The notes beneath the pieces were generated by a model. It worked only from the letters and a program-made list of their open reading frames with translations. It searched no databases and was not told the DNA's origin. Source: Diadema antillarum (lineage: Eukaryota). Taken from it: a stretch of DNA of 64,000 bases. The position numbers were made by a program, and so were the translations under genes. The DNA lies in NCBI RefSeq assembly GCF_040938485.1, contig NW_027271076.1, positions 310,001-374,000 on the forward strand, in the 5' to 3' direction. Numbering within the stretch: the first letter of the stretch is position 1; each line of letters starts with the position of its first letter. This document shows positions 6,413 to 62,939 of the stretch, in pieces.

Positions 6413-7504
6413 TTAGGATAATTCGATCCTAGGATTACTTTTCTCGGGTTGGAATTGTGATTCAAGATCTTCAAATATTGGTGTATTTCTTTTGGTTGCG
6501 TTTCGACAAAAATCTTTCACGGCTTCACGGAATTGCTTGTGACGAAGAGTGTACACTATCGGGTTCACGCAGGAGTTACAAATGGCGAGTGCATTGTCTA
6601 TGCGTGAGAGGGGACTGCGCACATAGTTCGGACAATACGCTATTTGGTCTGGAGCCCAGCAGATGACGTAGATAAGGACAACTGTCAATGTTAGCGTGAT
6701 GACTCGAGATCGCGCGATATTGTGGAACGATGCCGTGGACTCATTCGACACAAAGCGGGCGGCTTCTCTTCGGAGAGAGCGTGCAATGACGATCTGGGTT
6801 GTAAGCATGAGGGCGGTCGGGAAAGCAAAGTGGGCAACAAAGATATAAATCCCATAAAGGATTTCCAGGTTTCGCTCTTGTCGCTGATACACACACCGTC
6901 CCGTTGTCGCGCCCGTAGTGTTGTTGAAAAGAACTCGAACCATTAATATACTCGATCCAGCCCAAATCAGAAAAACGATGCGATTTACGAGTCGGCGACT
7001 TGCGAGGCGTCTAAAATGGATCGGATAAACGACAGCAAAAAAGCGATCAAGGGATACTGCCACCAGGCTGTAGATCGATGCTGTGACGGTAGTCCACACC
7101 AGAAACTCGCCTTCAATGACTTTGCAATAAAAAGCTCCCGTCAGTGAATTGGGAATAGAGTTGACTGTCGGGTGCGGAATCAAGAGGATCGAAGTGACAA
7201 AATCAGCTATTGCCAGATTTCCCACAAGGATATCCGTTGAGCGGCTCTTCGAGCGACGGCCGAACACTACAGCGATGACGAGGATGTTGCCAGTAATCCC
7301 AAGAATTGCGATGATGAGCTCGCAGATCACATACCAAGACCACGTCATACCTTCCCAAGACCACGTAATCAGATTTTGCTCAGCCACAGTCGAAACATCG
7401 CTATATCTCTCATTCAAAGCTGATTCTTCGGAGGGTGTTAGCATTTCAGTCACAACAACATCAAAATGTCCTTTTGTAGACATTTCAATAAGCGTAGTAC
7501 TCAT
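6413..7504 (-). CDS. Class A GPCR copy 1 (galanin/allatostatin-A receptor-like), 363 aa, with a net 7-aa deletion at the TM6/ECL3 junction
   Basis: 7TM motifs GN(TM1), LAIADF, DRF, CWAP, NPIVY and helix-8 FREAVK are present. The ORF-track start at 7555 lies in the intron: the acceptor TTGCAG| ends at 7531, so the first exonic ATG is at 7504. Confidence 0.9.
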   Translation of the reverse strand: MSTTLIEMSTKGHFDVVVTEMLTPSEESALNERYSDVSTVAEQNLITWSWEGMTWSWYVICELIIAILGITGNILVIAVVFGRRSKSRSTDILVGNLAIADFVTSILLIPHPTVNSIPNSLTGAFYCKVIEGEFLVWTTVTASIYSLVAVSLDRFFAVVYPIHFRRLASRRLVNRIVFLIWAGSSILMVRVLFNNTTGATTGRCVYQRQERNLEILYGIYIFVAHFAFPTALMLTTQIVIARSLRREAARFVSNESTASFHNIARSRVITLTLTVVLIYVICWAPDQIAYCPNYVRSPLSRIDNALAICNSCVNPIVYTLRHKQFREAVKDFCRNATKRNTPIFEDLESQFQPEKSNPRIELS

Positions 7505-7988
7505 TATTTTGAAAAGCAATTCCTTGTCCTCTGCAATACATGAGCAAAAGTACAAGTTAAATCAATATTATTACAAGTTGTATGTTACATCTATCGGATC
7601 GAAATGACATAATCAAAATTAAAGAGAAGTATTAGATCAGATGATTACAGAGTTTCTTTATCTTTAGAGACATGCTTACGACATCATTCGTGTATAATAT
7701 ACTTTATATTGTATTGAAAAAAATCCTTTATCAGACGAGTGTAAGAGAAATGAAAAAAAAATTGTATCACCTTGGATTAAGTCAACTTTTTCTTTTCTTT
7801 TCTTTGTGATGATGGAAATAAATAAACTATTGAATTGAATTGAATTGTATTGAGTGAGATATATCATAATCACTAGTGTATCAACATTATGTATAATTTT
7901 AGCGCTTATTCTTCCTTAAATCTGCATATAAACTATTGTTTACGACAAAAACGTTCCGATGAACCTCCAATATTCATTACAAATATGC

Positions 7989-8759: not shown

Positions 8760-9523
8760 AATAGTCATACATATAAATATCACAGTAACTGATGGTTTAT
8801 TTATAGTAATTGAGATTTTCTTAATGACATTTTTTTTTTTATCCAAGCTGTTAAACATACTTTCGTAAAATCGAGATAAAGCTGTCTTTTATCGATTCTT
8901 GTGTTTTCTAAGAGACAAAAGGAAATCACACGACTGTTGTGTAATAATCTAAGTCAAAATCATTTTCGTTGACACAATCTGTAATGCATGTGTATAAATG
9001 TACATATTGAATTTGTTATCATGAAAAGCCTGTCACACATAAGACAGCATATAATTCACATGAAATTTTGCCTTTGGCTGCAGGTTTCATAATGAATCTT
9101 TTTCTTGAGAGAAAATCAAATCGTGTGTCCATAAACAGTTCTGCATCATCTGTTATTTAACAAACATGCTAATCCCTTTCTGTAGTTTCATGTTAAAAAG
9201 TGCTAGGATTGAAACTCATTGATGTGGGAAAAAAAGTCAATTATGTATATATGAATAAGATTTAGGTTGATCATGTGGTTTTATCATTCTAGACTTCGAA
9301 AGCACTACCGGCACATCATATCAGACAATTGACTACAAGGCGTACCAAAAACAAGAGAAAGGAATAAGATGCGTGGCTGCATTTGAATTTACAAATGAAA
9401 GTTACTGTTGATGAAATTAGCCTATTTTGGTAACAGGGAATCATTTCCATGCTAGTTTCATTTATCACAACACGAGCACACACACAAACACACACACACA
9501 CACACATTGACCCATCTACTTAC

Positions 9524-16313: not shown

Positions 16314-17429
16314 TTAGGGTTTGTCGATCCAAGTTTGACATTTGTCCGATCGAAATTGTGATTCGAGATCCTCAAATATCGGTGCATTTCCTTTGCCTGT
16401 TTTTCTAAAAAAGTCTTTTACGGCTTCGCGGAATTTAGGGTGACGAAGGGTGTACACTATCGGGTTGACGCAGGAGTTACAAATGGCGAGTGCGGTAGTT
16501 ATACGTGAGAGGGGACTGCGAACATAGGACGGAGTGATGAGTCCTAGGTTAAACGAGAGGAACGCTATCTGGTCTGGGGCCCAGCAGATGACGTAGATGA
16601 GGACAACTGTCAATGTTAGGGTGAGGACTCGAGATCGGGCGGTCAGGTGGAACGATGCCGAGGACTCGTTCGACACGAAGCGGGCGGCTTCTCGCCGGAG
16701 TGAGCGCGCAATGGCTGCCTGGGTCAAGAGCATAAAAACGGTCGGGAGAGCTAACTGGACGACGAAGATATAAATCCCGTAAAGTATTTCAAGATTTTTC
16801 TGCTCTCGCTGATACACGCACTTCCCCAGTATCACACCCGTTGTATTAGTCAAAAAATTTCGAACCATAAAGACAAACGATCCTGCCCAAATGAGACAAA
16901 CGATGAGATTGACGATTTGGCGATTGGCGAAGCGTCTGAAATGAATTGGATAAACGACAGCGAAGAAGCGATCGAGGGATACTGCCAAGAGGCTGTAGAT
17001 CGATGCGGTAACCGTGGTCCACATCAAATAATCTCCTTCCAATATTTTACAAAATAATGCGCCCGTCCATGAATTGGGGATAGAGTTGACTGTCGGGTAC
17101 GGAATCAGAAGAACAGAAGTGATAAAATCAGCTATCGCCAGATTTCCCACAAGGATATCTGTCGAGCGACTCTTCGAACGACGGCCGAACACGACAGCGA
17201 TGACGAGAGCGTTGCCGGTGATGCCGATAATTGCGATGACGAGCTCGCAGATCACATACCAAGACCACGTCATACCTTTCCAAGACCATGTAATCAGATT
17301 TTTCCCAGCCACAGACGAAAAAGTGTTATATTCCTCATCGCCAGATGATTCGGGGGAGGCTGTTAGCATTTCGGTCACCATCACATCCAAATGTCCTTTT
17401 TCAGACATTCCAATAAGCGTTGCAGTCAT
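16314..17429 (-). CDS. Class A GPCR copy 2, 371 aa, intact
   Basis: Full set of class A motifs. Acceptor TAGCAG| ends at 17457, and the ATG is 27 nt into the exon. Confidence 0.93.
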   Translation of the reverse strand: MTATLIGMSEKGHLDVMVTEMLTASPESSGDEEYNTFSSVAGKNLITWSWKGMTWSWYVICELVIAIIGITGNALVIAVVFGRRSKSRSTDILVGNLAIADFITSVLLIPYPTVNSIPNSWTGALFCKILEGDYLMWTTVTASIYSLLAVSLDRFFAVVYPIHFRRFANRQIVNLIVCLIWAGSFVFMVRNFLTNTTGVILGKCVYQREQKNLEILYGIYIFVVQLALPTVFMLLTQAAIARSLRREAARFVSNESSASFHLTARSRVLTLTLTVVLIYVICWAPDQIAFLSFNLGLITPSYVRSPLSRITTALAICNSCVNPIVYTLRHPKFREAVKDFFRKTGKGNAPIFEDLESQFRSDKCQTWIDKP

Positions 17430-18587
17430 CGTTTTGAAAAATCAGTTCCTTGTACTCTGCTAATATAAGCAAAAATAGAAGTTAAATCAGTATTATGTCT
17501 ATTACTTTATTTCGATGGACTCCAAATAACATGATGGAAGTCACAGAAATATGTTAAATCTAATGAATACAAAGATTTCTTATCCTAAGACACATGCTGC
17601 CTTGGCTACGGTCAGATAATCAGTAGGTCTCTCATTAGCATAGATAGCATAGATCTGCATTTTTGAAATTGTGTATTTACCACCAATGACAAGAAGAACA
17701 TTCGGATGAATTTTCACTTTCCAGTACGGATATCCGTTAAATACTATGATGTTCTCTCATTTGAACATTTTTAAACATTATCGCATTGTGTATCAGAGGC
17801 AAAGTCTACTACAAAATTATGAATTGTTGATGAAAACAATGGTAACTGGTACATATAAAATGAACGAATTTTTTTATAACCTTTTTGTTCAACAAAAAAG
17901 GGACAATAATTTCATGAAATCTTATAGAACTGTCTTTATCCATTCATTAAAACTAATTGTCTAAAAGACAAAAAATAAACACGAAACTGTCCTTTTGTTC
18001 TTGTCATGTTCACGTGCACAATTGTTAATGCATATGATTATATATACATATATAAGTATATATAGTTTCCGTGGTTTTGAAAAGGGTGTCACACCTAAAA
18101 AAAAAGCTTATAAAATCATGTCACATTAAATTTCACTCCTGGCTCAAAACTTTGAAATTAATATATTAATTGAAAATCAACTTTGGTATACATTTCTGTA
18201 TCATTTTTTTTTATTTGTTTTGCGGAAACCATTTTTTTGTACTTTTATGTAGAAATGTTAGGATTGGAGATCATTTCTGTGAAAACAAAAACTGTCCGTT
18301 TCGTATAATGATTAAGATTTAGGTTAATTATCTGGTTTTCCATTTTCTGTACTTTATCTAGGAAGCACTAGCGGAACATAATGTAAGATAGTCAAACATG
18401 AGGGCATCTAGAACCAATGGAAAGAAAATAAGAGTGATCCTGCCTTTGCACTTCGGCAGAAATATTAATATTGACGACTTTTGCCTGTTTTGTCTACTGT
18501 TAATGATAGTAGAAAACTATTTGTATGATTGTTTAATTCATCACAACACACACACGCACACACACACACACAGACCCACAGACTTAC

Positions 18588-18672
18588 CTCTCTCGAAGAT
18601 CAGGTTGGTCTCGCAGTGATCATCCAAAAAGACGAAGTGGAACTTCAAAAAACTTCGACACTATTTTTATAT
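18588..18672 (-). promoter_or_regulatory. TATA box plus exon 1 of copy 2 (terminal ATG absent)
   Basis: TATAAAAA on the minus strand. The exon ends GAGAGAG|GTAAGT. Confidence 0.75.
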
Positions 18673-19137
18673 GAAAGCACATCACTAGACTGATGGCGAG
18701 TGCACTTTGAAAGTAATTAAATGCCAGAAGTCCGAAAGAATTGAATGGAATCTATGATTTAGCCTTCAAGCCACTTTGGATTTCCTGCAAAGTCAGCTTT
18801 GCCTCATATCTGTCTTATTATTTGTCATATTTCAAAAATTTCACTAAGGCAATAGAAAACAAACAGACCTCATATGAAGATTAAAAAGAAGCGCATCAAC
18901 ATCGCATTTTTTTTTTCGCTACTACAAGTCAATATTACATCTATCGTTATAACGATCAAGAAGTCCATGCATGAATTACAATCCCAACGCTAATGGTTGG
19001 GCAACATTTTTCTTTTTTTCGAGGAAAACGGAAATCAATCTTCTTCTTTTTTCTTAATTCGTGCTCTTTTTCAGGAACAGATGAATGGTGTAACAGAGTT
19101 CCCGGGTGCATTAACTCATGAAAAGATTTTATGTCTG

Positions 19138-24481: not shown

Positions 24482-25616
24482 CTAAGTTATTTCGATCTTG
24501 GGATGACGCTTATCGGGTCGGAATTGGGATTCCAGATCCCCAAATATTGGTGTAGTTGTTTTGTTCGTGTTTCTGAAAAAGTCTTTAACGGCTTCACGGA
24601 ATTGCGGGTGACGAAGGGTGTACAGTATCGGGTTCACGCAGGAGTTACAAATGGCGAGTGCGGTGACAACACGTGCAAAAGGACTACGCACAAAGGAAGG
24701 AGTGATAAGTCCCAGGTTGAAAGAGAAGAACGCTATCTGGTCTGGAGCCCAGCATATGACGTAGACAAGGACAACCGTCAATGTTAGCGTGAGTACTCGA
24801 GATCGGGCGATGTGGTGGAACGATGCCGTCGACTCGTTCGACACGAAGCGGGCGGCCTCCCGCCGGAGTGAGCGCGCAATGGCTACCTGGGTCGCAAGCA
24901 TAAGGACGGTTGGGAGGACGAACTGGACGACGAAAATATAAATCCCATAAACTATTTCAAGATTTCTGTGTTCTCGCTTATACACGCACTTTCCCAATAT
25001 CACATTTGTAGAGTTGATTAAGAAGATTCGAACCATGAAGACACACGATCCCACCCAAATAAGACAAACGATGGGATTGACCAGTCGGCGATTTGCGAAG
25101 CGTCTAAACTGGATCGGATAAACCACCGCGAAGAAGCGATCAAGGGACACTGCCACTAGGCTGTAGATTGATGCCGTTACGGTGGTCCACATCAAGTATT
25201 CACCTTCCACGACTTTACAGAATAATGCGCCAGTCCATGAATTGGGAATGGAGTTCAACTTTGGATACGGAATCAAGAGGATCGAAGTGACAAAATCAGC
25301 TATTGCAAGATTTCCCACGAGGATATCCGTTGAGCGACTCTTCGAACGACGCCCGAACACTGCAGCGATGACGAGAACGTTACCAGTGATCCCAAGAACT
25401 GCGATGACGAGCTCGCAGATCACATACCAAGGCCACGCCATACCTTTCCAAGACCACGTAATCAGATTTTGCTCAGCCACTGACGAAAAAGAGCTATATT
25501 CCTCATCGCCAGCTGTGGCTGTTCGCATTTCGGTCACCACTACATCTAAATGTCCTTCCGCAGACATTTCAATAACCGTTGCACTCAAATTGTTTTGAAA
25601 ATCAGTTCCTTGTATT
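24482..25616 (-). CDS. Class A GPCR copy 3, coding exon. Start is either the exon-1 ATG at 29579 (379 aa) or the internal ATG at 25567 (361 aa).
   Basis: Intact 7TM ORF. The ancestral first ATG reads ATTTG here (the ORF track used TTG at 25588). Acceptor GTCAG| ends at 25617. Confidence 0.9.
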
Positions 25617-26304
25617 CTGACACTGTAAGTAAAAAATAATGCAATGTAAGGTATTTACTCAACATAATGGCTTATTATGCATGAGGTTATGTTATATCAT
25701 CGGTAAAGATAACGTCATCAAAATCACAGACATGTATTCGAACTGATGAATACAAAGATTCATTGTCTATTAGTAGACACATGCTACAGTCAGATATATC
25801 ATCATTATTAGGATATCAATATAATAAACTTAAGTTTATGTGATTTACCAGTCTTTTTCTATAAAACAGCATTTTCTTAAACTTTATATTTGCCGCTAAT
25901 GTTAAGAAGAGCATTCCAATAAATCCTCACTGTTCATTACGGACGCCAATATACTAGTTCCTTCATTTGCGTTGACTTTAAACATTGTAACTCTGTGTAA
26001 TAGGACAAAGTTATGATCAAACAAGAAAGATTTATATTACAGGAATTGATACGGTCTTGATGAAGGGATTTTCGAAATAGCCTTGCTGTTACTGAATAAG
26101 ATATAGAACATTGTACTGAAATTGTCAAATGTCAATTGTCAAAAACATTTTTCTTTGAAGACAAAAATATTATAGAAAATTGTGATCCTCCTTGAGTTTC
26201 TGTCGTTTTCATTGTCACAGTTTTAATCTAAAATAAATTAAGTAGGGTCTATAGATATATACCGTAGATAAATAATGTATGAATATATATATAGAAATAT
26301 TATA

Positions 26305-26951
26305 TGTGACCTTGCATCACAAAAGCAACAAAGAGTTGCCAAACATGAATTTTAGTTAGGGGCAGATTCTGAAAGAGCAGACTCTAAGCTTTATAAGGAT
26401 GTATAGCTCAATTCATAATATGGACTCTCCTAACCTATGGAAATATTAAAAAGAAAGCATGCACTCTGGACAAGTGTGAACTGGGAAAAAAAGGGTTTGA
26501 AATACAGGGTCAATTCAAGCGTTTGATATTTACCAAACCGTGCTGGCTGTGCTATGAGTGGGACAAAAAACAGGATGTAAACCATCGTTGCAACAACAAT
26601 AAAGGGATTACCAGATTAAGCTGACATCAAGCATGCTTTATTAACACATTCTGTAGATGAGTAATGTCAACTTTCAAGGCGGTAACACTTTCCTTTCAAA
26701 AGTTATTAGAGTTGAAATTGAAAGGTTTGCAAAGGATTTTCAGGAAATGAAAAGGGACCTCCACCTGATCACACTACTCTACAAAAAAGGTTGTACAAAA
26801 ACTGCTAAAAACACACTCTCCCGTTCATTTTATGACCCCAAACTGAAAAATAATGAAGAACAAAATAGCTCTTACAGATAGTATGAAACACTCAAGATTG
26901 ACTCGGTTGACCCGTGTCACCTTTTTGTTGGTTTTGTGATGCACGGTCACA
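26305..26951 (+). mobile_element. MITE family 1, intron of copy 3 (left arm of an inverted pair)
   Basis: TA|TGTGACC...GCACGGTCACA. Confidence 0.85.
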
Positions 26952-26960
26952 TTATATATA

Positions 26961-27665
26961 CGTGACTGTGCATCACAAAACCAGAAAAAAAAAGTCGCAC
27001 CCCTTGATTTTACGTGAGGATTCAAAAATGCTGAAACAGGTCAATCAAGTCAATTTTGAGTTTTTCATATTTTCTGAAAGAGTCATTCTTCTTCTGAATT
27101 ATTTGTTAGTTTGGGATTATAAAATAAATGGGGAAAGTGTGTTTTTAGCAGTTTTTCTACAACCCTTTTTTTTTGTAGAGTGGTGTAATCATTATGTCTC
27201 AGAGGCCACTGTTCATTTCTTGAAAATTCTTTGCACATTATTCACTTTCAACCCTGATTACTTTTGAAAGGATAATGCTACTTCTTTGAAAGTTGGCATT
27301 TATCATGAACAGAATGTGTTAATAGAGCATGCTTAATTTCAGCCTAATCTGAAAATCCCTACATTGTTGTTGCTCCGGTGGTTTTTATCCTGCTTTCTGT
27401 CCAATTCATCGCACAGATAGCACGGCTTGGTAAAGCTTAAGCGCTTAAAGAGACCATGTACTTTAGAGCCTTTTTTTTTTTCTTAGTTCACACTTTTCCA
27501 GAGTGTGTTTGCTTTCTTTTCCAATATTTGGATAGGTTAGGAGAGTCCATTTGGATTGAGTTATACATCATTTTAAAGCTTAGGATCTGCCCTATGAGAA
27601 TCATTGCCTTGAACTAAAAATTCTTTTGTGGCGACTTCTTCATGGTTTTGTGATGGAGGGTCACA
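26961..27665 (-). mobile_element. MITE family 1, intron of copy 3 (right arm of the inverted pair)
   Basis: Opposite orientation to the previous copy; the spacer is only TTATATATA. Confidence 0.85.
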
Positions 27666-28170
27666 TGTTTTTGTACATTATGCGAGAGGTCGATCCTGAC
27701 CGAAACATACAGATGGTGTCTCATTGTGAAGCATAATAATTATGTGGAAGAAATAAAGTTTAAGGCTGTGATTTCCAAAATGTTCACAGAATCATGAGTC
27801 TGTACGTTGTACATACCCACACACTGCTGTGGTGCATGACGCCCCATACCCCGACCACTTAAATGTCCAAGGTAATTTCAGATGATTATCATCATAAGTG
27901 TTACCACAAACATACCTGATCCGAGAGTAGACATAGTTCAGAAGTTGTTTTAGTTATTACCTTTTATTATTGATATCCAAATATGTCATATGCTTACTTA
28001 AAAATAACATTAGATAGGATATATGTATGTATATATGTATATATATATATATATATATGAGATATGAGAAATGAGGAGAAATCGGTGCGTAGCTTTGACA
28101 TCATTATTCCTCTTACTGTTCCTCTTTTTTGGAAAAGCGCAAGAGTTGAAAAATTGGTCTCCGCCGGGGA

Positions 28171-28220
<50 letters not shown>

Positions 28221-28519
28221 CATATATATATGACATTAATCACCGTAGTACACTTTATGTTTAAAACGACGGTAAAGTGTGATTATTGTACTTCGGAAGT
28301 TTGATACAGGAATTGAATCTATTTTCTTTTTGTATGATACAGAACACATTTCTGTTGACTGCAGACTGTATCTCCGTGTTTAAATGTTTTGCTGATTTAT
28401 GCAAAGGTGATACTTCAGACCATTTTTTAATTATCTTATTTTAAATAGTTATATGATATTGCCCAGTATGATATTGTGCCTTCTATATCATGGCACATTA
28501 TGCCATCTAGACAATCATA

Positions 28520-29212
28520 TCTGACATTGCACCTCAAAACAAACAAAAATTCGCCAGACATGAATTTTTGGTTAAGACCATATTCTGAAAGAACAGACTT
28601 TAAGCTTTAAAATTATGTATAACTCAAATCAAATGGACTCTCCTAACCTACCTAAATATCGGAAAGAAAGCACAAACTCAGGAAAAGTGTGAACTGAGAA
28701 AAGAGGCTCTGAAGTACAATGTCTATTCAAGCGCTTAATCTTTACCAAACCGTGCTGGCTGTGCGATGAATGGGACAAAAAACAGGAAGTAAACCACCAG
28801 AGTAACAACAATGAAGGGATTATCAGATTAAACTGAAATTAAGCATGCCTCATTAACACATTCTGTCCGTAATAAATGCCAACTTTCAAATCAGTAGCAC
28901 TATCCTCTCAAAAGTTATTAGAGTTGAAAGTGAAGAGTGTGGACAAGGGTTTTTCAGAAATGAAAAAGGGATTCTAAAGACACACCTAATCACACTATTC
29001 TACCAGAAATGTTCGAGATAAACTGCTAAAAAAAACACACTTTCCTGCCCGTTTAATGATACCAAATTTTAGCATAATGTAAAAGAAGATCCGCTCTTTC
29101 AGAAAATATGAAAAAGTCAAGTTCGGCTAGGTTGACCCATTTCACTTATTTTCAGTCCTCACGCAAAATCATTGTGTGCGACTTTATGTTCGTTTTGAGG
29201 TGCACGGTCACA
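28520..29212 (+). mobile_element. MITE family 1, intron of copy 3 (young subfamily)
   Basis: Very similar to the copies at 8053, 51363 and 57691. Confidence 0.88.
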
Positions 29213-29574
29213 TATTGTAATGCGTTCTCTTGGCAGCTCCTGATGAAGGCCATAACGAAAGAATAGTCCTCGATAATGACAAGTGCAAGAATCATCCTTT
29301 AAGTATAAGATTAAGATCAAGATTAATATTAAGATTTAATTTAATCATCTAGTTTTAATTTTTTGTACTTCAACGTTGAAAGCACTAGAGGAACATTACG
29401 TAAGATAGGGGGATATAGGTCAACTAGAAACAAGAGAAAGGTGAGCTATGGCGTTGGAATTCCAAAGAAAAATTCAAATTGACGATATTACCCTCTTTTG
29501 ATGGTAGAAAACTATGTGTATGATTGTTTAATTCACCATATCACGAACACTTGCACACAGACCCACAGACTTAC

Positions 29575-29660
29575 CTCATGAAGAAGATCAGGTTGGTGTC
29601 GCAGCAAACATCCAAAAAGACGAAGTGGAACTTCAGAAAACTTCCTCACTACTTTTATAT
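29575..29660 (-). promoter_or_regulatory. TATA box plus exon 1 of copy 3
   Basis: TATAAAAG at 29659-29652. The exon ends CATGAG|GTAAGT. Predicted intron 29574-25617. Confidence 0.75.
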
Positions 29661-31525: not shown

Positions 31526-32209
31526 TGTGACCCTGCATCACAAAACAATCAAAAAGTCGCCAGACATGGATTTTTAGTTAAGAGTAGATTCTGAAAGACC
31601 AGACTCTAAGCTTTAAAATGATGTTTAACTCAATTCAAATGGATTTTCCTAATCTATATAGATATTGAAAAGAAAGGACACACTCTGGAAAGTGTGAACT
31701 GAGAAAACAGGCTCTGAAGAACAGGGTGTATTCAAGCACTTAACCTTTACTAAACTATGCTAGCTGTGGGATGAACTGAACAAAAACATAATGTTGACCA
31801 CTGGAGCAACAACAATGAAGGAATTATTAGATTAAACTGAAATTAAGCATGCTTCATTAGCACATTCTGTATAATGATTAATACCGACTTTCAATCCAGT
31901 AGCATTATTCTCTCAAAAGTTATTGGAGTTGAAAGTGAAGTGTATGGACACAGGGTTTTTGAGAAATGGGAAGGGTTCTATGAGAAACGACTAATCACAC
32001 AATTTCACCAAAATATGTTCAGGAAAAACTGTTCAAAACACAAGTGCCTGTTTGTCTTGTGATCCGAGACTTTTATATAATAGAACTAGACTTGTTCTTT
32101 CAGAAAATATGAAAAACTAAAGATTGGTTAGGTTGACCCATTTCACCTATTTTCAGTCCTCGCACAAAATCACTGTGTGCGACTTTTTGTTCGTTTTGTG
32201 GTGCATGGG

Positions 32210-32213
<4 letters not shown>
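31526..32213 (+). mobile_element. MITE family 1 between compound microsatellites
   Basis: TGTGACCCTGCATCACAAAAC...GTGCATGGGCACA. Confidence 0.85.
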
Positions 32214-36792: not shown

Positions 36793-37929
36793 TTAATCAG
36801 CTGATCCCACGTTGGCGTGTTGGCATATCGACAACTCGATCGCGTGTGGCAAACGAAGATTTGATTTTTGCCGATGCTTTAAATGACTTTTCTCGAGTCG
36901 GTGTTGCAATTCCAAATCCTCAAATATTGGTGTATTCCTTTTGCTTTTGTTTCTGAAGAAGTGCCTCACGGCCTCACGGAATTGCGGGTGTCGAAGGGTA
37001 TACACTATCGGGTTCACGCAGGAGTTACAAATGGCGAGGGCGATGACCACGCGTGCGAGAGTACTACGCACAAAGGAAGGAGTGAGACCTAGGTTGAAGG
37101 AGAGGAATGCTATTTGGTCTGGGGCCCAGCAGATGACGTAGATAAGGACAACCGTCAATGTTAGCGTGAGGACTCGAGAACGAGCGATTTGATGGAACGA
37201 TGCCGTGGACTCATTCGACACGAAGCGGGCGGCTTCTCTTCGGAGAGAACGTGCAATGGCTATCTGGGTCACTACCATGAGGACGGTCGGGAGAGCGAAA
37301 TGAACCACGAAGACATAAATCCCGAAGACGGTTTCGAGGCTTCGTGGCTGTCGTTGATACACGCACTTTCCCACTATGACGTCCGTAGTGTTGGTCCAGA
37401 AGATTCGAACCATAAAGACACAGGATCCTGCCCAAATAAGACAAACGATGCGATTGACGAGCCGACGAGTTGCGAATCGCATAAAATGGATTGGATAAAT
37501 GACAGCGAAGAAGCGATCGAAAGACACTGCCACTAGGCTGTAGATCGATGCCGTAACCGCAGTCCACATGACATATTCGCCTTCCATGACTTTACAAAAT
37601 AATGAACCCGTCCACGTATTTGGAATCGAGTTGACTGTTGGGTGCGGAATCAAGAAGACGGAGGTGACAAAATCAGCGATCGCCAGATTTCCGACGAGGA
37701 TATCCGTTGAGCGATTCATGGAGCGACGGCCGAATACGACAACGATGACGAGAGCGTTGCCAGTGATCCCAAGAATTGCGATGACGAGCTCGCAGATCAC
37801 ATACCAAGACCATGCCATAGCTTCCCAAGACCACGAGATTAGTTCCTGCCCAACCACAGACGAAAGCATTTCGGTCACCACCACATCTATATCTACTTTT
37901 GCCGACATTCCAATAGGTGCTGCACTCAT
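36793..37929 (-). CDS. Class A GPCR copy 4, 378 aa from the exonic ATG; shortened N-terminus and extended C-tail
   Basis: Intact 7TM motifs. ORF-track residues 1-22 are the intronic polypyrimidine tract. Candidate acceptors give exon starts at 37966 or 37957, and both put the exon-1 ATG in frame. Confidence 0.9.
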   Translation of the reverse strand: MSAAPIGMSAKVDIDVVVTEMLSSVVGQELISWSWEAMAWSWYVICELVIAILGITGNALVIVVVFGRRSMNRSTDILVGNLAIADFVTSVFLIPHPTVNSIPNTWTGSLFCKVMEGEYVMWTAVTASIYSLVAVSFDRFFAVIYPIHFMRFATRRLVNRIVCLIWAGSCVFMVRIFWTNTTDVIVGKCVYQRQPRSLETVFGIYVFVVHFALPTVLMVVTQIAIARSLRREAARFVSNESTASFHQIARSRVLTLTLTVVLIYVICWAPDQIAFLSFNLGLTPSFVRSTLARVVIALAICNSCVNPIVYTLRHPQFREAVRHFFRNKSKRNTPIFEDLELQHRLEKSHLKHRQKSNLRLPHAIELSICQHANVGSAD

Positions 37930-38736
37930 CGCTTTCAAAATGAATTTCTTGTATAGCCTGTCACTACTGGCAAGAGAAAGAAAAAAAAAACAAAGCAAGA
38001 AACAAAGTGAAATAAAATGAAATAAAAGATACAACTATGTCTTATCATTTAATGTCTTTCGGATCAAAAGAACATTGTGACGATAACAAAAAAGTAAAGT
38101 AAAATATTCAGTCTGATGATTACATTCCATCATTATTCAGATATATCATTATCAAGAGTATGTGTATATAGTTACCTTAAATTTATGTGATTTAACATTG
38201 TGCTTCATTATAGCTGCGTTTTCCGGACCTTTACATTTACCGCCATTGATAACAAGAACATTATAGTGAATCTTTTCTATTCAATGAGGATGTCCTTATA
38301 CCTGCTTTCTCATTTCTATTGTTTTGAATAAATATTGAAGATTTGTCATGTTGTAAAGCAGAGACAAAGATTAGGACAAAACTATGATATATTCCAAAAT
38401 TATAGACGTCTGAGTATTATAATTGTACAAAGGATTGAAATTTGGTATCTTAGATAACCATGGTCTTATTAGGTGAAAGTACAATTTCATGTTTTAATGA
38501 AATTGCGATTATTAAAAAAAAAGTGTCTTTAAGCTATTCTTGAAAACAAACCTTTGAAAAAAATGTATGTATATTATAAGTTGTTATTTTGAAAAGCCTT
38601 TCACACTTACACGCAGGACGCTTCATGCCACTTTAATTTTCGTTTCTTGCTGAAAGGTTGAAATGGGTAAACTTTAGACAGAAAAAATAGATACGCATAT
38701 CAACACACAGTTCTTTACACTAGTAATCTCTTTATT

Positions 38737-38992: not shown

Positions 38993-39277
38993 GTCCCCTG
39001 CGTATATGGCTAGAATTTACGTTTATCATCAGGTTTCCCATTTTCTTGAAAAGGACTGTCAGAACATTAATTGTAAGATAGTCAGAATTAAGGGCTACTA
39101 TACAAAAGCAAGAGATGGAAGAAATAGTGCGAACCTGCCTTCGGATTTCTAAAGAAATAATCATGTTGACGATATTAGCCTGTTTTGATAGTAGAACACT
39201 GTTTCCATGATTGCTCAATTTATAACAACACTAGCGCTGACACAAACACCCACACACAGAGAGACCAACACACTTAC

Positions 39278-42417: not shown

Positions 42418-43533
42418 TTATCCTAGGATTAATTTTTTTTCGGGTCGGTACTGTGATTCTAGATGCTCAAATATTGGTGTATTTCTTTTGCCTGTGTTCA
42501 TGAAGAAATCCTTAACTGCTTCATGACATTGTTGGTGGCGAAGGGTGTACACTATTGGGTTCACACAGGAGTTACAAATGGCGAGTGCGACGAGAAAGCG
42601 TGCAAATGGACTGCGCACATATGAAGGAGTGAGTCCCAGGTTAAATGGCATATGCAATATATGATCTGGGGCCCAGCATATGATATAGATAAGGACAACC
42701 ATTAATGTTAGCGTCAGAACTCGTGATCGGGCAACATTGTGGAATAATGCTGTGGACTCATTCGACATGAAGCAAGCGGCCTCCCGTCGAAGGGAACCCG
42801 CAATGTCTGCCTGGGTCATAATCATAAGAGCGGTCGGGATAGCAAACAGGATAACAAAGATGAAAATCCCTTAGACAACTTCAAGGATTCGTGGTGGTCG
42901 TTGATACACGCACTTTCCCACTACGACGTCTGTAGTGTTGGTTCAGATGATCTGAACCATCAAGATACATGATACCGCCCAAATAAGACAAATCGTGATA
43001 TTCACGAATCGGCGATTGATCAAGCGCTTAAAATGGATCGGATAAACGACTGCGAAGAAGCGATCGAAGGACAGTGCCACCAGGCTGTATATCGACGCCG
43101 TAATTGTGGTCCACATCAAATATTCTCCTTCCAAGACTTTACAATATAATTCTCCCGTCCATGAATTGGGAATAGACTTGACGTTTGGGTACGGAATCAA
43201 GAAGATTGAAGTAAGAAAATAAGCTACCGCCAAATTTCCTACGAAGATATCCATTGAGCGACTCTTTCCGCGACTCTTCGATCGACGGCCGAACACCACG
43301 GCGATGACAAGGGCGTTGCCAGTGATCCCAAGAATTGAGATGACAAGCTCGCAGATCACATACGAAGACCACGTCATAACTTCCCATGACCATGTGATCA
43401 GGGGTGGCTCAGCTGCGGACGAAAAATTGCTATATTTCTCTTTGGCATTTAATTCGAAGGAGACTGTCAGCATTTCGGCCCCTACCTTTTTCAAGCATAG
43501 TTTTGGGGACACTCCAGTAAGCGTTGTATTCAT
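42418..43533 (-). pseudogene. GPCR copy 5 pseudogene, closest paralog of copy 6
   Basis: The two ORF-track fragments are in the same frame, broken by TGA (42943-42945) and TAA (42871-42873). There is a +2 frameshift near the C-terminus, and D2.50 is changed to Y (LAVAYF). It shares the ICL1 4-aa insertion (RGKS) with copy 6. Confidence 0.93.
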
Positions 43534-46049
43534 TGTTTCGAAAATCGATTCCTTTTTCCCTGTAACATCAAATGAAAAAAAGTATTAATGAATAATTCAA
43601 AACAAGTGAATAAAAAAGTCTCACTATGTTGAGCCCCTGGGGTTAAGTCAACATAAGGTAGGTCACCGAAAATTGTTCACTTTCATACATAGAACAATTA
43701 ATTATCCTTAGCCTTTTTTTTTTCATTATCATAATGATGTTGATAAGCAGTTATATAATCATTACAGAAAATGATTATGTTAATTTAACATTCTGCTTCG
43801 GTAAATCTTTGTGTTCGGAAACATTACATTTACCGCCAATGATAAGAAGAGCATAATGAATCTTCACTATTCAGTATGGGTGTTCCTTTATTAGTTCTCT
43901 CGTATTCGTTCCTTTGACACCATGTTACTTTTTGTATGAAGGACATAAAGTTCAGATCCTGAATGTGATATCTTCCGCAATTTCCAAAATTAATGATTCA
44001 GATTATGGTAAGCTAATAAAAACTGAATAAGCTAATCTGGTAGATAACCTTGTTGCTATCGAACATAATAAAGGGCATGCTGTTTGCATGAAATTGCGAC
44101 AAAAAATGAGAATTGGTACTTTTTTGTCTTTAATAAAAGACTTCGATAAAGATACATATAAAAGACACAAATAAAATGGGAATATGCTTTATGATTGTAC
44201 TACTTTATATCTTCTTGTCTGTATGGACACGATGTGTGCATGTGTGTGTGTTTTTGTACAATACACTTGCTATTTTGTAAAGCCTGTCCCAAGTTCATGC
44301 AAAAGCCTGGCATTAATTTTTGTTTGTGATTTAACGGTTCAGATGAATAACCTTGATAGAAAGCCAAATATACGTGTATACATGTATTTGTGCTCTATTT
44401 CATACACATGGCAGCCACATTCTGAAGTTTCATGTTAAAGTAAACTCGACTAGGAGTGGATTTTATTTCTAATAAAAACAAATTATCCGCTATAAAAATA
44501 CTACGATTTTCTATTCCTCATGCTTCACTTCTGAAACCACTACAGGAACATTTTGTACGAGAGTAAAATGAGTTGTCCATAATAATGCAAAGCTCTGATT
44601 TTTAGTGGACCCCTCTCTCTTGAGATAGAGGATGGATAATCTATCATGTTACGTTGTATTTCTTTTAAATTCATAGTTACTTATAATTTTCATGGTACAG
44701 TTACATTTCTTGTCAGTTCTTTTCTTGGATATAATAATGATTATCTTCTGTTGAAGAAGCAACTGAAATATCAAGATTGAATTGAATTGAATTGAATTGA
44801 AATAATAAGGTCAACAAGAAACCAGAGAAGAAAACTGTCGAAGGAGCTCTTATTTAATAAGTTTAGTTTGAGCCTTCGTTTGGATTTCCAAAGTCAAACT
44901 TGCTGATGATAGCTATCTTCTGTAGTAGACGATAATAAAATTTCTTCAGGCCACTTTGATTGCCTGCAAACTCAGCTTGAATTCATTTGTTATGTATAAT
45001 AGTATTCTAAGAAAGTTCCACTATTTTGCATAGAATTCAAGAAGATCTTTCTAATGGGCATAACAAAGAGACGCATTAACTTTGCAGTTTCTGCGCAAGC
45101 ATACCACAATATCACGTCAGTAATCCATATATGGATTATATTAACGCTGATAGATGTGCAATAATCTTTTTATAGTATTTTTATTTATTCATTTATTCAT
45201 TTCTGCCGAGGAAATCGAAAATCGATCATTCGGGTTTTTTCCCCCTCTTTGTTAGGAAAAGATCTATGGTATGACAGAGTTCGTAGGTGCACTGACTCAT
45301 GCAAAGATTGCATCTCTGTCTTGTTGTCTTTCTTTTTCTCTCTCTCTCCTGCTCACTGACATGCGCACAGAAATATCCAACTGTCTTTCTCACTCGTTCT
45401 CTCTGCTCTTTGTCCGTTTTTTTCTCTCCCCCATTACAGATCTGAATGGTTTCAGTCCTTTTCTATTAGTGTGTAGTCGTCTTCTTTGCTTTCAGATTTG
45501 TGCTCCTAACTAGGCTACTATAAAATTGTACTATGCTCTCTGAAATTCTTGTTCTTTTAAAGCAACAATAAAAGCAACAATTATGATAAGACGAAGAAAA
45601 AGAGAAGAAGAAAATAGAAAAAAATCATAATAAAAGATTATAGATCATGCGCATGCGATAAATTCAAAGAATACCTGCGTGATTTTGTTTTTGTTTTTGG
45701 CTTTTCACTCTCTGCAATAAGCATTATACCGGTATCTACAAAAACGTTTGTTATAGAAAGCTAATTTCTACTTGTACATGTTTAACCATGGTTAAATGCA
45801 GTACCTATAGTCTTATATTTTCAACTCTTTTAGAACATTCAGTGGTTTGTGTGGATTATATTGAAATTTATGTTGCCAGTAGACCAAGTGCATTACATAT
45901 GGCCAAACTATTCAATTCAGCTAATGCTTGCCATTTAAAAAAAAACAAAAACAAAAACAAAAAAACTAGCCAAATTGTTCAGGATAATGTTTCAATTTTC
46001 TTCAGATCCAAAGAAGAAAGACAATAGTTTTGGAGAAAGTAAAGTAGAT

Positions 46050-48976: not shown

Positions 48977-50101
48977 TTACGCAATGTTTATCCTAGGATT
49001 ACTTTTCTCGGGTCGGTATTGTGATTCCAGATCCTCAAATATTGGTGTATTTCTTTTGCCTCTGTTCATGAAGAAATCCTTAACGGCTTCACGGAATTGT
49101 TGGTGGCGAAGTGTGTACACTATTGGGTTCACACAGGAGTTACAAATGGCGAGTGCGACGAGAAAGCGTGCAAAAGGACTACGCACAAAGGAAGGAGTAA
49201 GCCCCAGGTTGAAAGTAAAATACGCTATTTGGTCTGGGGCCCAACAGATGACGTAGATGAGGACAACCGTTAATGTTAGTGTGAGGACTCGAGATCGAGC
49301 GACATTGTGGAACGATGCTGTGGACTCATTCGACACGAAGCGAGCGGCCTCCCGTCGAAGGGAACGCGCAATGGCTGTCTGGGTCCCAATCATAAGAGCA
49401 GTCGGGATAGTAAACAGGATAACAAAGATGTAAATCCCATAGACAACTTCAAGGATTCGTGGTGGTCGCTGATACACGCACTTTCCCACTACGACGTCTG
49501 TAGTGTTGGTTAAGATGATCTGAACCATCAAAATACATGATACCGCCCAAAGAAGACATATGATGATATTTACGAGTCGGCGATTGACCAAACGCTTAAA
49601 ATGGATCGGATAAACGACAGCGAAGAAACGATCGAAGGACACTGCCACCAGGCTGTAGATCGACGCCGTAATCGTGGTCCACATCAAATATTCTCCTTCC
49701 AAGACTTTACAATATAATGCTCCTGCCCATGAATTGGGAATAGACTTGATGTTTGGGTACGGAATCAAAAGGATTGAAGTGAGAAAATCAGCTATCGCCA
49801 AATTTCCTACGAAGATATCCATTGAGCGACTCTTTCCGCGAGTCTTCGAGCGACGGCCAAACACCACGGCGATGACGAGAGCGTTGCCAGCGATCCCAAG
49901 AATTGCGATGACGAGCTCGCAGATCACATACGAAGACCACGTCATAACTTCCCATGACCATGTGACCAGGGGTTGCTCAGCTGCGGACGAAAAATCGCTA
50001 TATTTCTCTTCGGCATCTAATTCGTAGGAGGCTGTTAGCATTTCGGTCCCTACCTCCTTTAAGTATAGTTTTGAGGACACTCCAGTAAGAGTTGCATTCA
50101 T
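48977..50101 (-). CDS. Class A GPCR copy 6, 374 aa, intact
   Basis: Full set of class A motifs. Acceptor TTACAG| ends at 50128. Confidence 0.93.
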   Translation of the reverse strand: MNATLTGVSSKLYLKEVGTEMLTASYELDAEEKYSDFSSAAEQPLVTWSWEVMTWSSYVICELVIAILGIAGNALVIAVVFGRRSKTRGKSRSMDIFVGNLAIADFLTSILLIPYPNIKSIPNSWAGALYCKVLEGEYLMWTTITASIYSLVAVSFDRFFAVVYPIHFKRLVNRRLVNIIICLLWAVSCILMVQIILTNTTDVVVGKCVYQRPPRILEVVYGIYIFVILFTIPTALMIGTQTAIARSLRREAARFVSNESTASFHNVARSRVLTLTLTVVLIYVICWAPDQIAYFTFNLGLTPSFVRSPFARFLVALAICNSCVNPIVYTLRHQQFREAVKDFFMNRGKRNTPIFEDLESQYRPEKSNPRINIA

Positions 50102-52277: not shown

Positions 52278-52316
<39 letters not shown>

Positions 52317-60441: not shown

Positions 60442-61506
60442 TTACAGATCCTCAAATATTGGTGTGTTTTCTTTGCTTGTGTTCCTGAAAAAGTCCGTAA
60501 CCGCTTCACGGAATTGCGGGTGACGAAGGGTGTACAGTATTGGGTTCACGCAGGAGTTACAGATGGCGAGTGCAGTGACTACGCGAGCAAAAGGACTACG
60601 CACAAAGGAAGGAGTAAGTCCGAGGTTGAAAGAAAAATAGGCTATCTGGTCTGGGGACCAGCAGATGAAGTAGATAAGGACAACAGCGAATGTTAGCGTG
60701 AGGACTCGAGATCGGGCTGTTTGGTGGAACGATGCTGTAGACTCATTTGACTCGAAGCGGGTGGCCTCCCGCCGAAGCGAGCGCACAATGGCTATCTGGG
60801 TCACAAGCATAAGGACGGCCGGGAGAGCGAACTGGACGACAAAAATATAAATCCCGTAGATGATTTCAAGTTTTCGCGGCGGTCGCTGATATATGCATTT
60901 TCCCACTTCCACGTTCGTAGTGTTGGTTAAGGGTATTTGAACCGTTAAGATGCATGACATCGCCCAAATAAGACAAACAATGAAATTTACTAGTCGACGA
61001 TTGACAAAACGCTTAAAATGAATGGGATAAACAACAGCGAAGAAACGATCGAAGGACATTGCCACCAGGCTGTAGATCGACGCCGTAATCGTGGCCCACA
61101 TCAAATAGTCTCCTTCCAAACCTTTACAATATAATGCTCCCGTCCACGAATTGGGAATAGAATTGACTGTTGGGTATGGAACCAGAAGAGTCGAAGTGAG
61201 GAAATCAGCTATCGCCAAATTTCCAACGAGGATATCCATTGAACGACCCTTCGAGCGACGGCCGAACACGACGGCGATGACGAGAGCGTTGCCGACGATC
61301 CCAATTATTGCTATAACAAGCTCGCAGATTACATACCAGGACCACGTCATAACTTTCCAAGACCACATGATTCGATTTTGCTCAGCCATGGACAAAACAT
61401 TGGTATATTCCTCATCGCCAGTTGATTGGGAAGAGGCTGTTAGCATTTCGGTCACTACCTCATTAAAGTGTGGTTTTGCCGACATTCCAGTAAGCGTTGC
61501 ATTCAT
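60442..61506 (-). CDS. Class A GPCR copy 7, 354 aa, C-tail shortened by about 16 aa
   Basis: Intact 7TM plus helix 8. Acceptor TTGCAG| ends at 61533. TAA replaces the Glu of EDLE, and the ancestral tail is still readable to the TAA at 60394-60396. Confidence 0.88.
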   Translation of the reverse strand: MNATLTGMSAKPHFNEVVTEMLTASSQSTGDEEYTNVLSMAEQNRIMWSWKVMTWSWYVICELVIAIIGIVGNALVIAVVFGRRSKGRSMDILVGNLAIADFLTSTLLVPYPTVNSIPNSWTGALYCKGLEGDYLMWATITASIYSLVAMSFDRFFAVVYPIHFKRFVNRRLVNFIVCLIWAMSCILTVQIPLTNTTNVEVGKCIYQRPPRKLEIIYGIYIFVVQFALPAVLMLVTQIAIVRSLRREATRFESNESTASFHQTARSRVLTLTFAVVLIYFICWSPDQIAYFSFNLGLTPSFVRSPFARVVTALAICNSCVNPILYTLRHPQFREAVTDFFRNTSKENTPIFEDL

Positions 61507-62126
61507 TGTTTTGAAAATCAATTCCTTGTACTCTGCAAGTACAAAACAAAAGATAAAGTACATGACATGTCCTTATCGTATGATATGAAATTACGATCAC
61601 TTCAAAATCATGGAAACCACAGGAAATTATTCAATGTGATGAGCACAATTACTTATAGTTTTCAGCATAAGATTTGTCATTATGAACATATCATATAATT
61701 GTATACCGACAATGAATTGATTTAACATTACGCTTACGTAAATCTGCGTATTGTATTTACCGTAAATGATATGAGGAGCATTCCAATATCCATTTTGACT
61801 ATTCAGTACAGATATTCCTATGCAAGTTCTCTCATTTTCGTTGATTTTGAAGCACTTTCAAGTTGTGTTTACCACGAATAAAAGCAGGGCAAGCACATAA
61901 TGAGTTTGTAATATCGAATGTATTCCACAATATTCTAAATCATTGATGTCAGAGTATTTAATACAAATCGAATAAATACATTAAATAGCGCTTGATGTTG
62001 TATGTCTACCTTATGACACTGAAAACTGGAAAAATGATACCTTTTTTCTGACGTTCATCAATTCAAAATAATGTATATCTTTGAACAATATAAAATATAA
62101 TGGAAGCATATATGGGCATGTCTATA

Positions 62127-62770
62127 TTTGACCTTGCATCACAAAACCAACAAAAAGCCTGCAGACAACTGTGTTAAGTTAAGGGCAGATTCTGAAAGAG
62201 CAGACTTTAAGCTTTAAAATGATGTATGACTCAATTCAAATGGATTTTCCTAACCTATCTTAAATAGTGATATTAAAGATAGTACACACTTTGGAAAAGT
62301 GTGTACTGAGAAAAGAGGTTCTGAAGATTAGGGTCTATTCAAGCGCCATGCTGTGTGCAATGAATGGGAAAAAAAAAAAAACTCCACAGCGACAATATTG
62401 AAGGGATTATCAGATGTAACTGAAAATGATCCTGCTCTATTAACATATTTTGTCCATGACTAATTCCAACATTAAAAGCAGTACCGCTATGCTTTTAAAA
62501 GTTTTAGTTTTTTGGTGTGTTTTTTACAGTTGAGAGTGATGAGTGTGTAAAAGGATTTTCAGAAATGAAAACGAGACTTACGACACACCTAATCACACTA
62601 TTCTACAACAATATGTCCTAGAAAAAACTGCTCAAAACACAATATTTCCCCTACGTGTTCTGATCTCAAACTTTAGCATGATATAGAAGAATCGCTCTTT
62701 CTGAACATATGAGTCCACATGTAAAATCAGTGAGTGCGACCTTTTATTGGTTTTGTGATTGACGTTCACA
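62127..62770 (+). mobile_element. MITE family 1, intron of copy 7
   Basis: Decayed TIRs, TA flanks, family interior. Confidence 0.82.

Positions 62771-62887: not shown

Positions 62888-62939
<52 letters not shown>

What the first reader, a model, noticed from the sequence alone, without database searches (positions are those of the whole stretch)
25565..29579. Copy 3: a 2-nt insertion destroys the old start codon and brings the uORF ATG into frame
Seen: paralogs read AAA ACA ATG, but copy 3 reads AAAACA ATTTG AGT. Splicing 29575 to 25616 gives ATG AG|A ATA CAA GGA ACT GAT TTT CAA AAC AAT TTG AGT GCA..., that is MRIQGTDFQNNLSATVIEMSAEG, continuous with the 7TM ORF. The new N-terminus is former uORF sequence and adds an N-L-S glycosylation sequon. 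A second acceptor 6 nt upstream keeps the frame. Inference: one mutation turns a repressive uORF into the main start, making non-coding exon 1 coding.
Basis: partly seen in the sequence, partly recalled or inferred. Interest (0 to 1): 0.8.

Follow-up and report, generated by a model that had tools for sequence, protein, structure and literature searches.

The report
In-frame upstream ATG in urchin receptor
In one gene of a fast-evolving sea-urchin chemoreceptor-like family, a real two-base insertion destroyed the old start codon and put a small upstream start codon in frame, but comparison with relatives suggests ordinary drift of a changeable 5' leader, with a nearby downstream ATG able to serve as the start.

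Summary
The window is Diadema antillarum (JBFRCO010000188.1:300001-364000) and carries seven tandem rhodopsin-type GPCR genes on the minus strand.

- **Insertion.** Six paralogs read A-TG-A at the start. Copy 3 reads ATTTG (25590-25586).
- **It is real.** The insertion is in the second assembly haplotype and in DNA contigs of three further read sets.
- **Predicted exon 1.** All copies except the broken copy 5 have a conserved TATA box followed by a roughly 52-nt first exon. In five of them it ends ATGAG|GTAAG; copy 2 has lost that ATG.
- **Frame.** Joining 29575 to 25616 or to 25622 puts this ATG in frame, adding 18 or 20 residues before the ATG at 25567.

- No RNA run was available, so the splice and the start site used are untested.
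- The upstream ATG has a pyrimidine at -3 in every copy; M1 and M8 have a purine.
- The D. setosum ortholog has neither the upstream ATG, the old ATG nor the insertion. It must start at the ATG equivalent to 25567, and the gene is under purifying selection (dN/dS 0.21).
- Among 20 family genes the junction ATG was lost repeatedly, the old ATG was lost at least 4 times, and in-frame capture arose three times.

This fits neutral leader turnover. The scan had already judged the sister case, copy 4 (s1-224642), to be drift.

The parts
24482..25567 (-). Copy 3 receptor CDS from the conserved second Met (M8, ATG 25567-25565) to the stop; 361 aa rhodopsin-type GPCR
   Evidence: ORF. Pfam 7tm_1 E=2e-41. 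dN/dS 0.21 against the D. setosum ortholog.
25586..25590 (-). ATTTG: the ancestral start ATG (M1) interrupted by two extra T. It now reads AAT TTG (N L) in the receptor frame.
   Evidence: Alignment A1. Present in haplotype 2 and in contigs of X1, X2 and X3 with no indel listed at the site. Absent in D. setosum, which reads CTG there.
25568..25616 (-). Exon-2 leader from the conserved acceptor to M8. It is the former 5'UTR / overlapping-uORF sequence, now open in the receptor frame.
25617..25624 (-). Tandem acceptors: AG 25624-25623 (exon would start at 25622) and AG 25618-25617 (exon starts at 25616), behind a T-rich tract. Both keep the frame.
   Evidence: The CAG at 25619-25617 aligns with the acceptor of all paralogs. 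Sequence is identical in D. setosum.
25617..29574 (-). Predicted 5' intron (3958 nt here, 3106 nt in haplotype 2), filled with repeats
   Evidence: Extreme contig depth at 26350-27585 and 28471-29355.
28516..29210 (-). Polymorphic high-copy repeat insertion inside the intron. Present in the window haplotype; absent in haplotype 2 and in a contig of X1.
   Evidence: X1 record 7 joins 28515 to 29211. (window 29211 matches L002 7170 and window 28520 matches L002 7166).
29575..29626 (-). Predicted non-coding exon 1 (about 52 nt; start inferred from the TATA box and CCACTTC). It ends ATGAG before donor GTAAGT (29574-29569).
   Evidence: Alignment A2. nhmmer hits upstream of 6 of the 7 copies in the window and of most family genes in the related loci. 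94% identity to D. setosum against 85-88% in the intron.
29577..29579 (-). Junction upstream ATG, context ttcttcATGa (T at -3). In frame with the receptor in copy 3.
   Evidence: Unchanged in the X1 and X2 contigs and in haplotype 2.
29588..29611 (-). Small 7-codon uORF wholly inside exon 1 (ATG 29611-29609, stop TGA), about 15 nt from the predicted cap site
   Evidence: Also present in the D. setosum ortholog, c2 and c4.
29652..29659 (-). TATAAAAG box, nearly invariant across family members (one copy, c2, reads TATAAAAA)
25526..25528 (-). Third in-frame ATG (M21), the start chosen in the public annotation (348-aa model)
   Evidence: P0001/P0070 sequences.

Best explanation
Copy 3 is a functional member of a tandemly expanded, intronless-CDS, rhodopsin-type (echinoderm odorant-receptor-like) GPCR family of Diadema antillarum.

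Each gene has a TATA-driven, roughly 50-nt first exon that is spliced to an acceptor about 30 nt upstream of the ancestral start, M1. This splice is predicted, not shown.

In the D. antillarum lineage, after the split from D. setosum, a 2-nt T insertion inside M1 destroyed that start. It also shifted the exon-1 junction ATG from an out-of-frame overlapping uORF into the receptor frame, an oORF-to-N-terminal-extension conversion.

That upstream ATG sits in a weak context. Ribosomes must leak past it in the paralogs. So the mRNA most likely yields two proteoforms: a minor 379-aa form (381 aa with the alternative acceptor) from the upstream ATG, and the 361-aa form from the ATG at 25567. The latter is sufficient for function, as the D. 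setosum ortholog shows.

The event is one of many neutral-looking rearrangements of a rapidly changing leader, not a demonstrated regulatory innovation.
For: - **Insertion real and widespread:** both assembly haplotypes plus three read sets.
- **Exon-1 architecture conserved:** found upstream of most of the 20 surveyed genes of two species, with TATA, donor and acceptor.
- **Frames verified:**
- **Start contexts:** upstream ATG -3 = T or C in every copy; M1 -3 = A or G; M8 -3 = G.
- **D. setosum ortholog:** orthology supported 99/98 in the tree and by collinearity. It reads CCTGAG|GT in exon 1 and CTG at M1, with no insertion, so only M8 can start it.
- **Purifying selection:** c3 dN/dS 0.21, like c2 (0.19) and c1 (0.24).
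- **Turnover in the family:** the junction ATG is lost in Dant c2, Dset c3o, L003b, L004a/L006b, L005b, L007a, L007b and L009g. M1 is lost in c3, Dset c2o, L007a and L009g, and all of these keep M8. Genes without M8 all keep M1. In-frame capture arose three times independently: Dant c3, Dant c4 and Dset c2o.
Against: - No RNA data, so exon-1 usage, acceptor choice and start site are all inferred.
- If the upstream ATG is used efficiently, the long form could dominate.
- In M1-lost genes an out-of-frame junction ATG is never retained (0 of 5 against 5 of 12). This could hint at selection rather than drift, though it is not significant (hand-calculated Fisher-type probability about 0.13) and the cases are not phylogenetically independent.
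- The two haplotypes differ by 5 non-synonymous and 2 synonymous changes. These numbers are too small to say anything about present constraint.
Confidence: 0.6

Rival explanations
1. One reading: the former uORF ATG (29579) is now the principal start of copy 3. Exon 1 has become coding, and the new N-terminus, with its N-L-S sequon, is a functional gain.
For: It is the first in-frame AUG of the predicted mRNA with no stop before the receptor. The insertion is present in all haplotypes seen. In-frame capture recurs in the family (c4, D. setosum c2 ortholog). No M1-lost gene keeps an out-of-frame junction ATG.
Against: The context is weak (T at -3) and identical to paralogs in which this ATG must be bypassed. 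The D. setosum ortholog functions without it. The extension is not conserved and is already polymorphic, T or I at residue 6. N-tail sequons are not conserved in the family. Public gene models do not use it.
Confidence: 0.2
2. Exon 1 at 29575-29626 is not part of copy 3's mature mRNA. This could be because of a different promoter inside the repeat-filled 4-kb intron, or because of disuse. The upstream ATG would then be irrelevant, and the gene would simply have lost M1 and start at 25567.
For: The intron is 2-3 times longer than in the paralogs and is invaded by repeats, one of them polymorphic. NCBI's RNA-seq-informed models lack exon 1 (pipeline described in PMC13511894).
Against: Promoter, exon 1, donor and acceptor are intact and more conserved between species (94%) than the intron (85-88%). 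The same architecture is found across the family.
Confidence: 0.15
3. Copy 3 is a decaying gene. Loss of the start codon would be the first step of pseudogenisation.
For: M1 is lost. The haplotype comparison gives 5 non-synonymous against 2 synonymous differences. The array contains a true pseudogene, copy 5.
Against: The ORF is intact in both haplotypes and in D. setosum. dN/dS is 0.21, equal to neighbours that have M1. The CDS differs 0.6-0.8% between haplotypes against about 3.5% in the flanks.
Confidence: 0.04
4. The TT is a sequencing or assembly error.
For: None found.
Against: Present in two assembled haplotypes and in contigs of three read sets from two studies.
Confidence: 0.01

Closest known systems
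N-terminal extensions from in-frame upstream AUGs (NTE; 'class 1 uORFs'), as opposed to out-of-frame overlapping uORFs (oORF; 'class 2')
   Same: In paralogs c1, c6 and c7 the exon-1 ATG opens an oORF that overlaps the receptor start. In copy 3 the same ATG is in frame with no stop, which is the definition of an NTE (PMC7889888; PMC4751561).
   Different: Here the conversion can be traced to one dated 2-nt insertion that simultaneously removed the reference start. The ATG straddles a splice junction (ATGAG|GT). Translation of the extension is not shown.
uATG birth-death turnover in 5' leaders (genome-wide studies, e.g. PMC7889888, PMC13019311)
   Same: Rapid gain and loss of upstream ATGs with little constraint on the uORF peptide. 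Here the junction ATG is lost in 9 of 17 leaders with a known exon 1, and the frame changes three times.
   Different: The turnover is seen within one young tandem gene family and includes turnover of the main start itself (M1 versus M8).
Echinoderm odorant-receptor-like GPCR expansions ('surreal-GPCRs' of Strongylocentrotus purpuratus)
   Same: Rhodopsin-class, lineage-specific tandem expansion, uninterrupted CDS. The nearest non-Diadema relatives are Lytechinus and Strongylocentrotus receptors at 40-45% identity (PMC7042368).
   Different: Placement in surreal groups A-F was not tested. Expression in tube feet or pedicellariae is unknown for Diadema.

Membership tests
Rhodopsin-family GPCR (Pfam PF00001 7tm_1) | Match to the 7tm_1 profile above the gathering score | tested here: met
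   142.6 bits against a cut-off of 30.5, E=2e-41, profile positions 1-260 of 260.
Rhodopsin-family GPCR (Pfam PF00001 7tm_1) | D/E-R-Y/F motif after TM3 and NPxxY in TM7 | tested here: met
   Read directly in the translation...SLDRFFAV... and ...VNPILYTL....
Echinoderm OR-like / surreal-GPCR expansions | Lineage-specific tandem array of closely related paralogs with uninterrupted CDS | tested here: met
   7 copies in the window and at least 8 more on the same contig between 148 and 390 kb. Orthologous array in D. setosum.
Echinoderm OR-like / surreal-GPCR expansions | Phylogenetic placement within the published S. purpuratus groups A-F | not tested
   Only BLAST-level similarity (40-45%) to Strongylocentrotus and Lytechinus receptors.
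Echinoderm OR-like / surreal-GPCR expansions | Expression in sensory appendages (tube feet, pedicellariae, spines) | not testable with these tools
   No RNA run was served for this species.
N-terminal extension (in-frame upstream AUG) | Upstream AUG in frame with the CDS and no intervening stop | tested here: met
   for both candidate acceptors and for both haplotypes.
N-terminal extension (in-frame upstream AUG) | The AUG lies in the mature mRNA (exon 1 transcribed and spliced to this acceptor) | tested here: inconclusive
   Supported only by conservation of TATA, exon 1, GTAAGT donor and acceptor across paralogs and species. No RNA contig crosses the junction.
N-terminal extension (in-frame upstream AUG) | Ribosomes initiate at the upstream AUG | not testable with these tools
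   Only the context could be read: T at -3, A at +4.
Regulatory (conserved, repressive) uORF | Upstream AUG conserved among paralogs and orthologs beyond the background | tested here: not met
   The junction ATG is replaced by CAC, TAC, ATA, CTG or GAG in 9 of 17 leaders with a known exon 1, while the AG|GT donor is kept.

The most novel reading that the evidence does not exclude
The exon-1 junction ATG could act as a standby start that interacts with loss of the main start. In this family, a gene that has lost M1 never retains the junction ATG out of frame (0 of 5). It is either captured in frame (D. antillarum c3, D. setosum c2 ortholog) or deleted (D. setosum c3 ortholog, L007a, L009g). Among genes that keep M1, 5 of 12 retain it out of frame. 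If this holds, selection would be reshaping the leader each time the start moves from M1 to M8, and the two orthologs of copy 3 would be alternative solutions to the same problem.
Probability: 0.1. Interest if true: 0.5.

Novelty: new member of a known kind. Interest (0 to 1): 0.3.

Why it matters
If translated, copy 3 would be a cleanly dated natural example of an overlapping uORF becoming an N-terminal extension through a single indel that also removes the old start. It sits in a family where the same capture happened three times.

That makes the array a convenient natural series for testing leaky scanning and start-codon turnover: out-of-frame, in-frame and absent upstream ATG; M1 present or lost.

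As it stands, the evidence points to neutral drift of a non-essential extracellular N-tail and a dispensable upstream ATG. The practical value is mainly for annotation. Public models of these genes start at inconsistent methionines (M1, M8, M21 or later), and none includes exon 1.

Tried and rejected
1. **RNA evidence.** The look-up of sequencing runs returned no run on record as RNA. The one run of unknown kind (X4) gave only a 185-nt CDS fragment and no junction. Both tools are then exhausted, so the splice stays untested.
2. **Exact look-up of the M8-start protein.** It is not in the collection. The cluster of the annotated model holds only the two haplotype copies, both starting at M21.
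3. **Public annotation as evidence for the start.** Rejected. Models of neighbours begin at M1, M8, M21 or even inside the N-tail (P0016), and one is a chimera of two genes (P0004).
4. **Shared versus independent loss of M1 in the two species.** Independent loss takes 3 events and shared loss takes 4. This cannot be decided.
5. **Association of M1 loss with the state of the upstream ATG.** 0 of 5 against 5 of 12, hand-calculated Fisher-type probability about 0.13. Not significant, and the cases are not independent.
6. **Pseudogene reading.** Rejected on dN/dS 0.21.
7. **Earlier findings by words.** Nothing returned.
Full report
**What the window is.** The window holds seven paralogous ORFs of about 350-410 codons on the minus strand. 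Counted along the plus strand they are:

| Copy | Coordinates | Note |
|---|---|---|
| 1 | 6413-7555 | |
| 2 | 16314-17429 | |
| 3 | 24482-25588 | subject of this finding |
| 4 | 36793-38034 | |
| 5 | 42418-43533 | broken |
| 6 | 48977-50101 | |
| 7 | 60442-61563 | |

Copy 3 matches Pfam 7tm_1 over the whole profile (E=2e-41). The word search identifies the source as Diadema antillarum. Close orthologs are in D. setosum, and the next relatives (40-45% identity) are in Lytechinus and Strongylocentrotus. Locus coordinates returned later place the window at JBFRCO010000188.1:300001-364000. The family array extends from about 148 kb to 390 kb of that contig. This is the kind of lineage-specific rhodopsin-type expansion described in echinoderms as odorant-receptor-like or 'surreal' GPCRs (PMC7042368).

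**The observation.** It is correct on every count.
- Aligning the seven 5' ends shows a conserved acceptor CAG about 30 nt upstream of a start ATG in six copies. Copy 3 carries ATTTG at 25590-25586, two bases longer.
- A motif ending CATGAG|GTAAG lies 1.3-4 kb upstream of copies 1, 3, 4, 6 and 7: 5 matches against 0.09 expected.
- That motif sits in a conserved block with an invariant TATAAAAG about 33 nt before a CCACTTC-like initiator.
- A profile search also finds a diverged exon 1 for copy 2 (window 18576-18677) and none for the pseudogene copy 5.
- Joining ATGAG (29579-29575) to 25616 gives an open frame of 18 codons running into the ATG at 25567 and on into the receptor. The alternative acceptor six bases upstream (exon start 25622) also keeps the frame.
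- The N-L-S sequon is created by the insertion.

**Is the insertion real?** Yes.
- The public assembly retains both haplotypes of one animal (PMC13511894).
- The second haplotype (L002, collinear, 96-97% identical) has the same ATTTG and the same exon-1 ATG.
- DNA contigs from three further read sets cross 25586-25590. X1 is possibly the assembly animal; X2 and X3 are two other samples from another study. X2 record 10 and X3 record 16 cross with zero gaps. X1 record 5 carries 13 gaps somewhere along its length, and no indel is listed at the site for any of the three runs.
- X1 and X2 also cover 29575-29579 unchanged.
- Contigs cannot exclude a rare allele without the insertion.

**The ortholog.** The D. 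setosum gene for P0002 is the ortholog of copy 3. The loci are collinear and the tree gives 99/98 support.
- Its exon 1 is 94% identical to copy 3's but reads CCTGAG|GTAAGT, so it has no junction ATG.
- Its exon 2 reads AAAACACTGTGT, so it has no M1 and no 2-nt insertion.
- Its only possible start is the ATG equivalent to 25567 (M8). That is also the annotated start.
- The gene pair nevertheless evolves under purifying selection: dN/dS 0.21, against 0.19 for copy 2 and 0.24 for copy 1.

Two conclusions follow. The M8 start suffices for a functional receptor in this orthogroup. The TT insertion arose on the D. antillarum side after the split. Whether M1 was lost once or twice cannot be decided (3 events against 4).

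**Family survey.** I paired exon-1 and leader hits for 20 genes of the two species and built a tree of 19 of them, leaving out the broken copy 5.

| Junction ATG state | Genes |
|---|---|
| Out of frame (overlapping uORF) | c1, its D. setosum ortholog, c6, c7, L004b |
| In frame | D. antillarum c3; D. antillarum c4 (+2 at the acceptor, M1 kept); D. setosum c2 ortholog (T-run +5, M1 changed to ATA) |
| Replaced by CAC, TAC, ATA, CTG or GAG, AG\|GT donor kept | D. antillarum c2, D. setosum c3 ortholog, L003b, L004a/L006b, L005b, L007a, L007b, L009g |

- M1 is lost in c3 (both species), the D. setosum c2 ortholog, L007a and L009g. Every one of these keeps M8.
- Genes without M8 (c5, c6, L003b, L005a) all keep M1.
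- The leader is therefore highly changeable. The junction ATG is not a conserved regulatory element, and the receptor needs one of M1 or M8.
- Both frames are already open across the roughly 50-nt leader, so any +2/-1 indel fuses them. Three in-frame cases among eight leaders with the ATG is what random phase would give.

**Mechanism.** The upstream ATG has a pyrimidine at -3 in all copies (ttcttcATGa). M1 always has A or G at -3, and M8 has G. By the established scanning rule that a purine at -3 favours initiation (my knowledge), the upstream ATG is leaky. There is also an internal argument: c1, c6 and c7 can only make receptor if most ribosomes bypass the same ATG in the same context.

I therefore expect copy 3, if spliced as predicted, to give two proteoforms:
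- a minor form of 379 aa (381 aa with the alternative acceptor) from 29579;
- the 361-aa form from 25567.

A 7-codon uORF within exon 1 (29611-29588) lies about 15 nt from the predicted cap and is probably skipped. The extension lengthens an unconserved extracellular N-tail and is already polymorphic (T or I at residue 6). N-tail sequons are not conserved in the family. Shown here: the DNA facts, the frames, the conservation pattern and the selection on the CDS. Inferred: transcription start, splicing, start usage and glycosylation.

**What could not be done.**
- No RNA run was served and the single read-laying run gave only DNA-like contigs.
- NCBI's RNA-informed models do not include exon 1 for c3, c4 or the D. 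setosum c2 ortholog. Their start choices are inconsistent (M1, M8, M21, later) and one model is chimeric, so I give them little weight.
- Frames were computed only inside scripts.

**Comparison with what is known, and verdict.**
- In the usual classification the paralogs carry an out-of-frame overlapping uORF and copy 3 an N-terminal extension (PMC7889888; PMC4751561).
- Birth-death turnover of upstream ATGs is well documented (PMC7889888, PMC13019311).
- Copy 3 is a tidy new instance, traceable to one indel that also removes the old start.
- The comparative evidence favours ordinary drift, in line with the earlier follow-up on copy 4 (s1-224642).
- One pattern is left open: no M1-lost gene keeps an out-of-frame junction ATG (0 of 5 against 5 of 12, not significant).
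- Interest 0.3.

Noticed in passing
L001:16157-17015 (D. setosum ortholog of copy 2): A third independent in-frame capture. M1 is ATA, the T-run in the leader is 9 instead of 4-5, and exon 1 ends CTGATGAG|GTAAGT. The junction ATG therefore reads MRVQGIHFFFKTISATLIG-M... into the receptor. D. antillarum copy 2 instead lost the junction ATG (CGAGAGAG|GT, window 18576-18677) and keeps M1.
   Followed up: partly
window 28516-29210: A roughly 695-bp very high-copy repeat (summed contig depth about 1e6) inside the copy 3 intron is an insertion polymorphism. It is present in the window haplotype and absent in haplotype 2 (L002) and in an X1 contig that joins 28515 to 29211. Related copies lie at 26300-27660 and 31526-32212.
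   Followed up: partly
window 25524: The window haplotype has CGA (Arg) in ...TEM-R-TATAG. Haplotype 2 and all three read sets have CTA (Leu), the residue found in nearly all paralogs (TEML). The Arg allele is private to this haplotype among the sequences seen.
   Followed up: partly
window 7449-7536 and 25565-25616 (c1/c3-type leaders): In c1, and in the inferred ancestral c3, the overlapping uORF from the junction ATG ends at a TGA one base before the M8 ATG (TGA-A-ATG). That geometry would allow reinitiation at M8 and might explain why M8 is kept in most copies.
   Followed up: no
L009:10001-19220 (contig 360442-389661; overlaps window 60442-64000): The public model P0004 (396 aa) is a chimera. 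Its N-terminal two thirds come from the next gene upstream of the window (L009g, which has lost both M1 and the junction ATG), spliced onto the C-terminal part of copy 7.
   Followed up: partly
window 9480-9517, 52280-52316, 39235-39271, 29530-29568: A (TG)n-rich tract follows the exon-1 donor in several copies. It is longest in c1 and c6. It could be a slippage-prone tract or an intronic splicing element.
   Followed up: no
window 60442-60460 (copy 7 3' end): The copy 7 ORF stops right after ...TPIFEDL, about 14 residues short of the C-tail shared by the other copies (...FEDLESQ...).
   Followed up: no
window 42418-44950 (copy 5): The profile search found the exon-2 leader of the broken copy 5 (43478-43567) but no exon-1/promoter block upstream of it.
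   Followed up: partly
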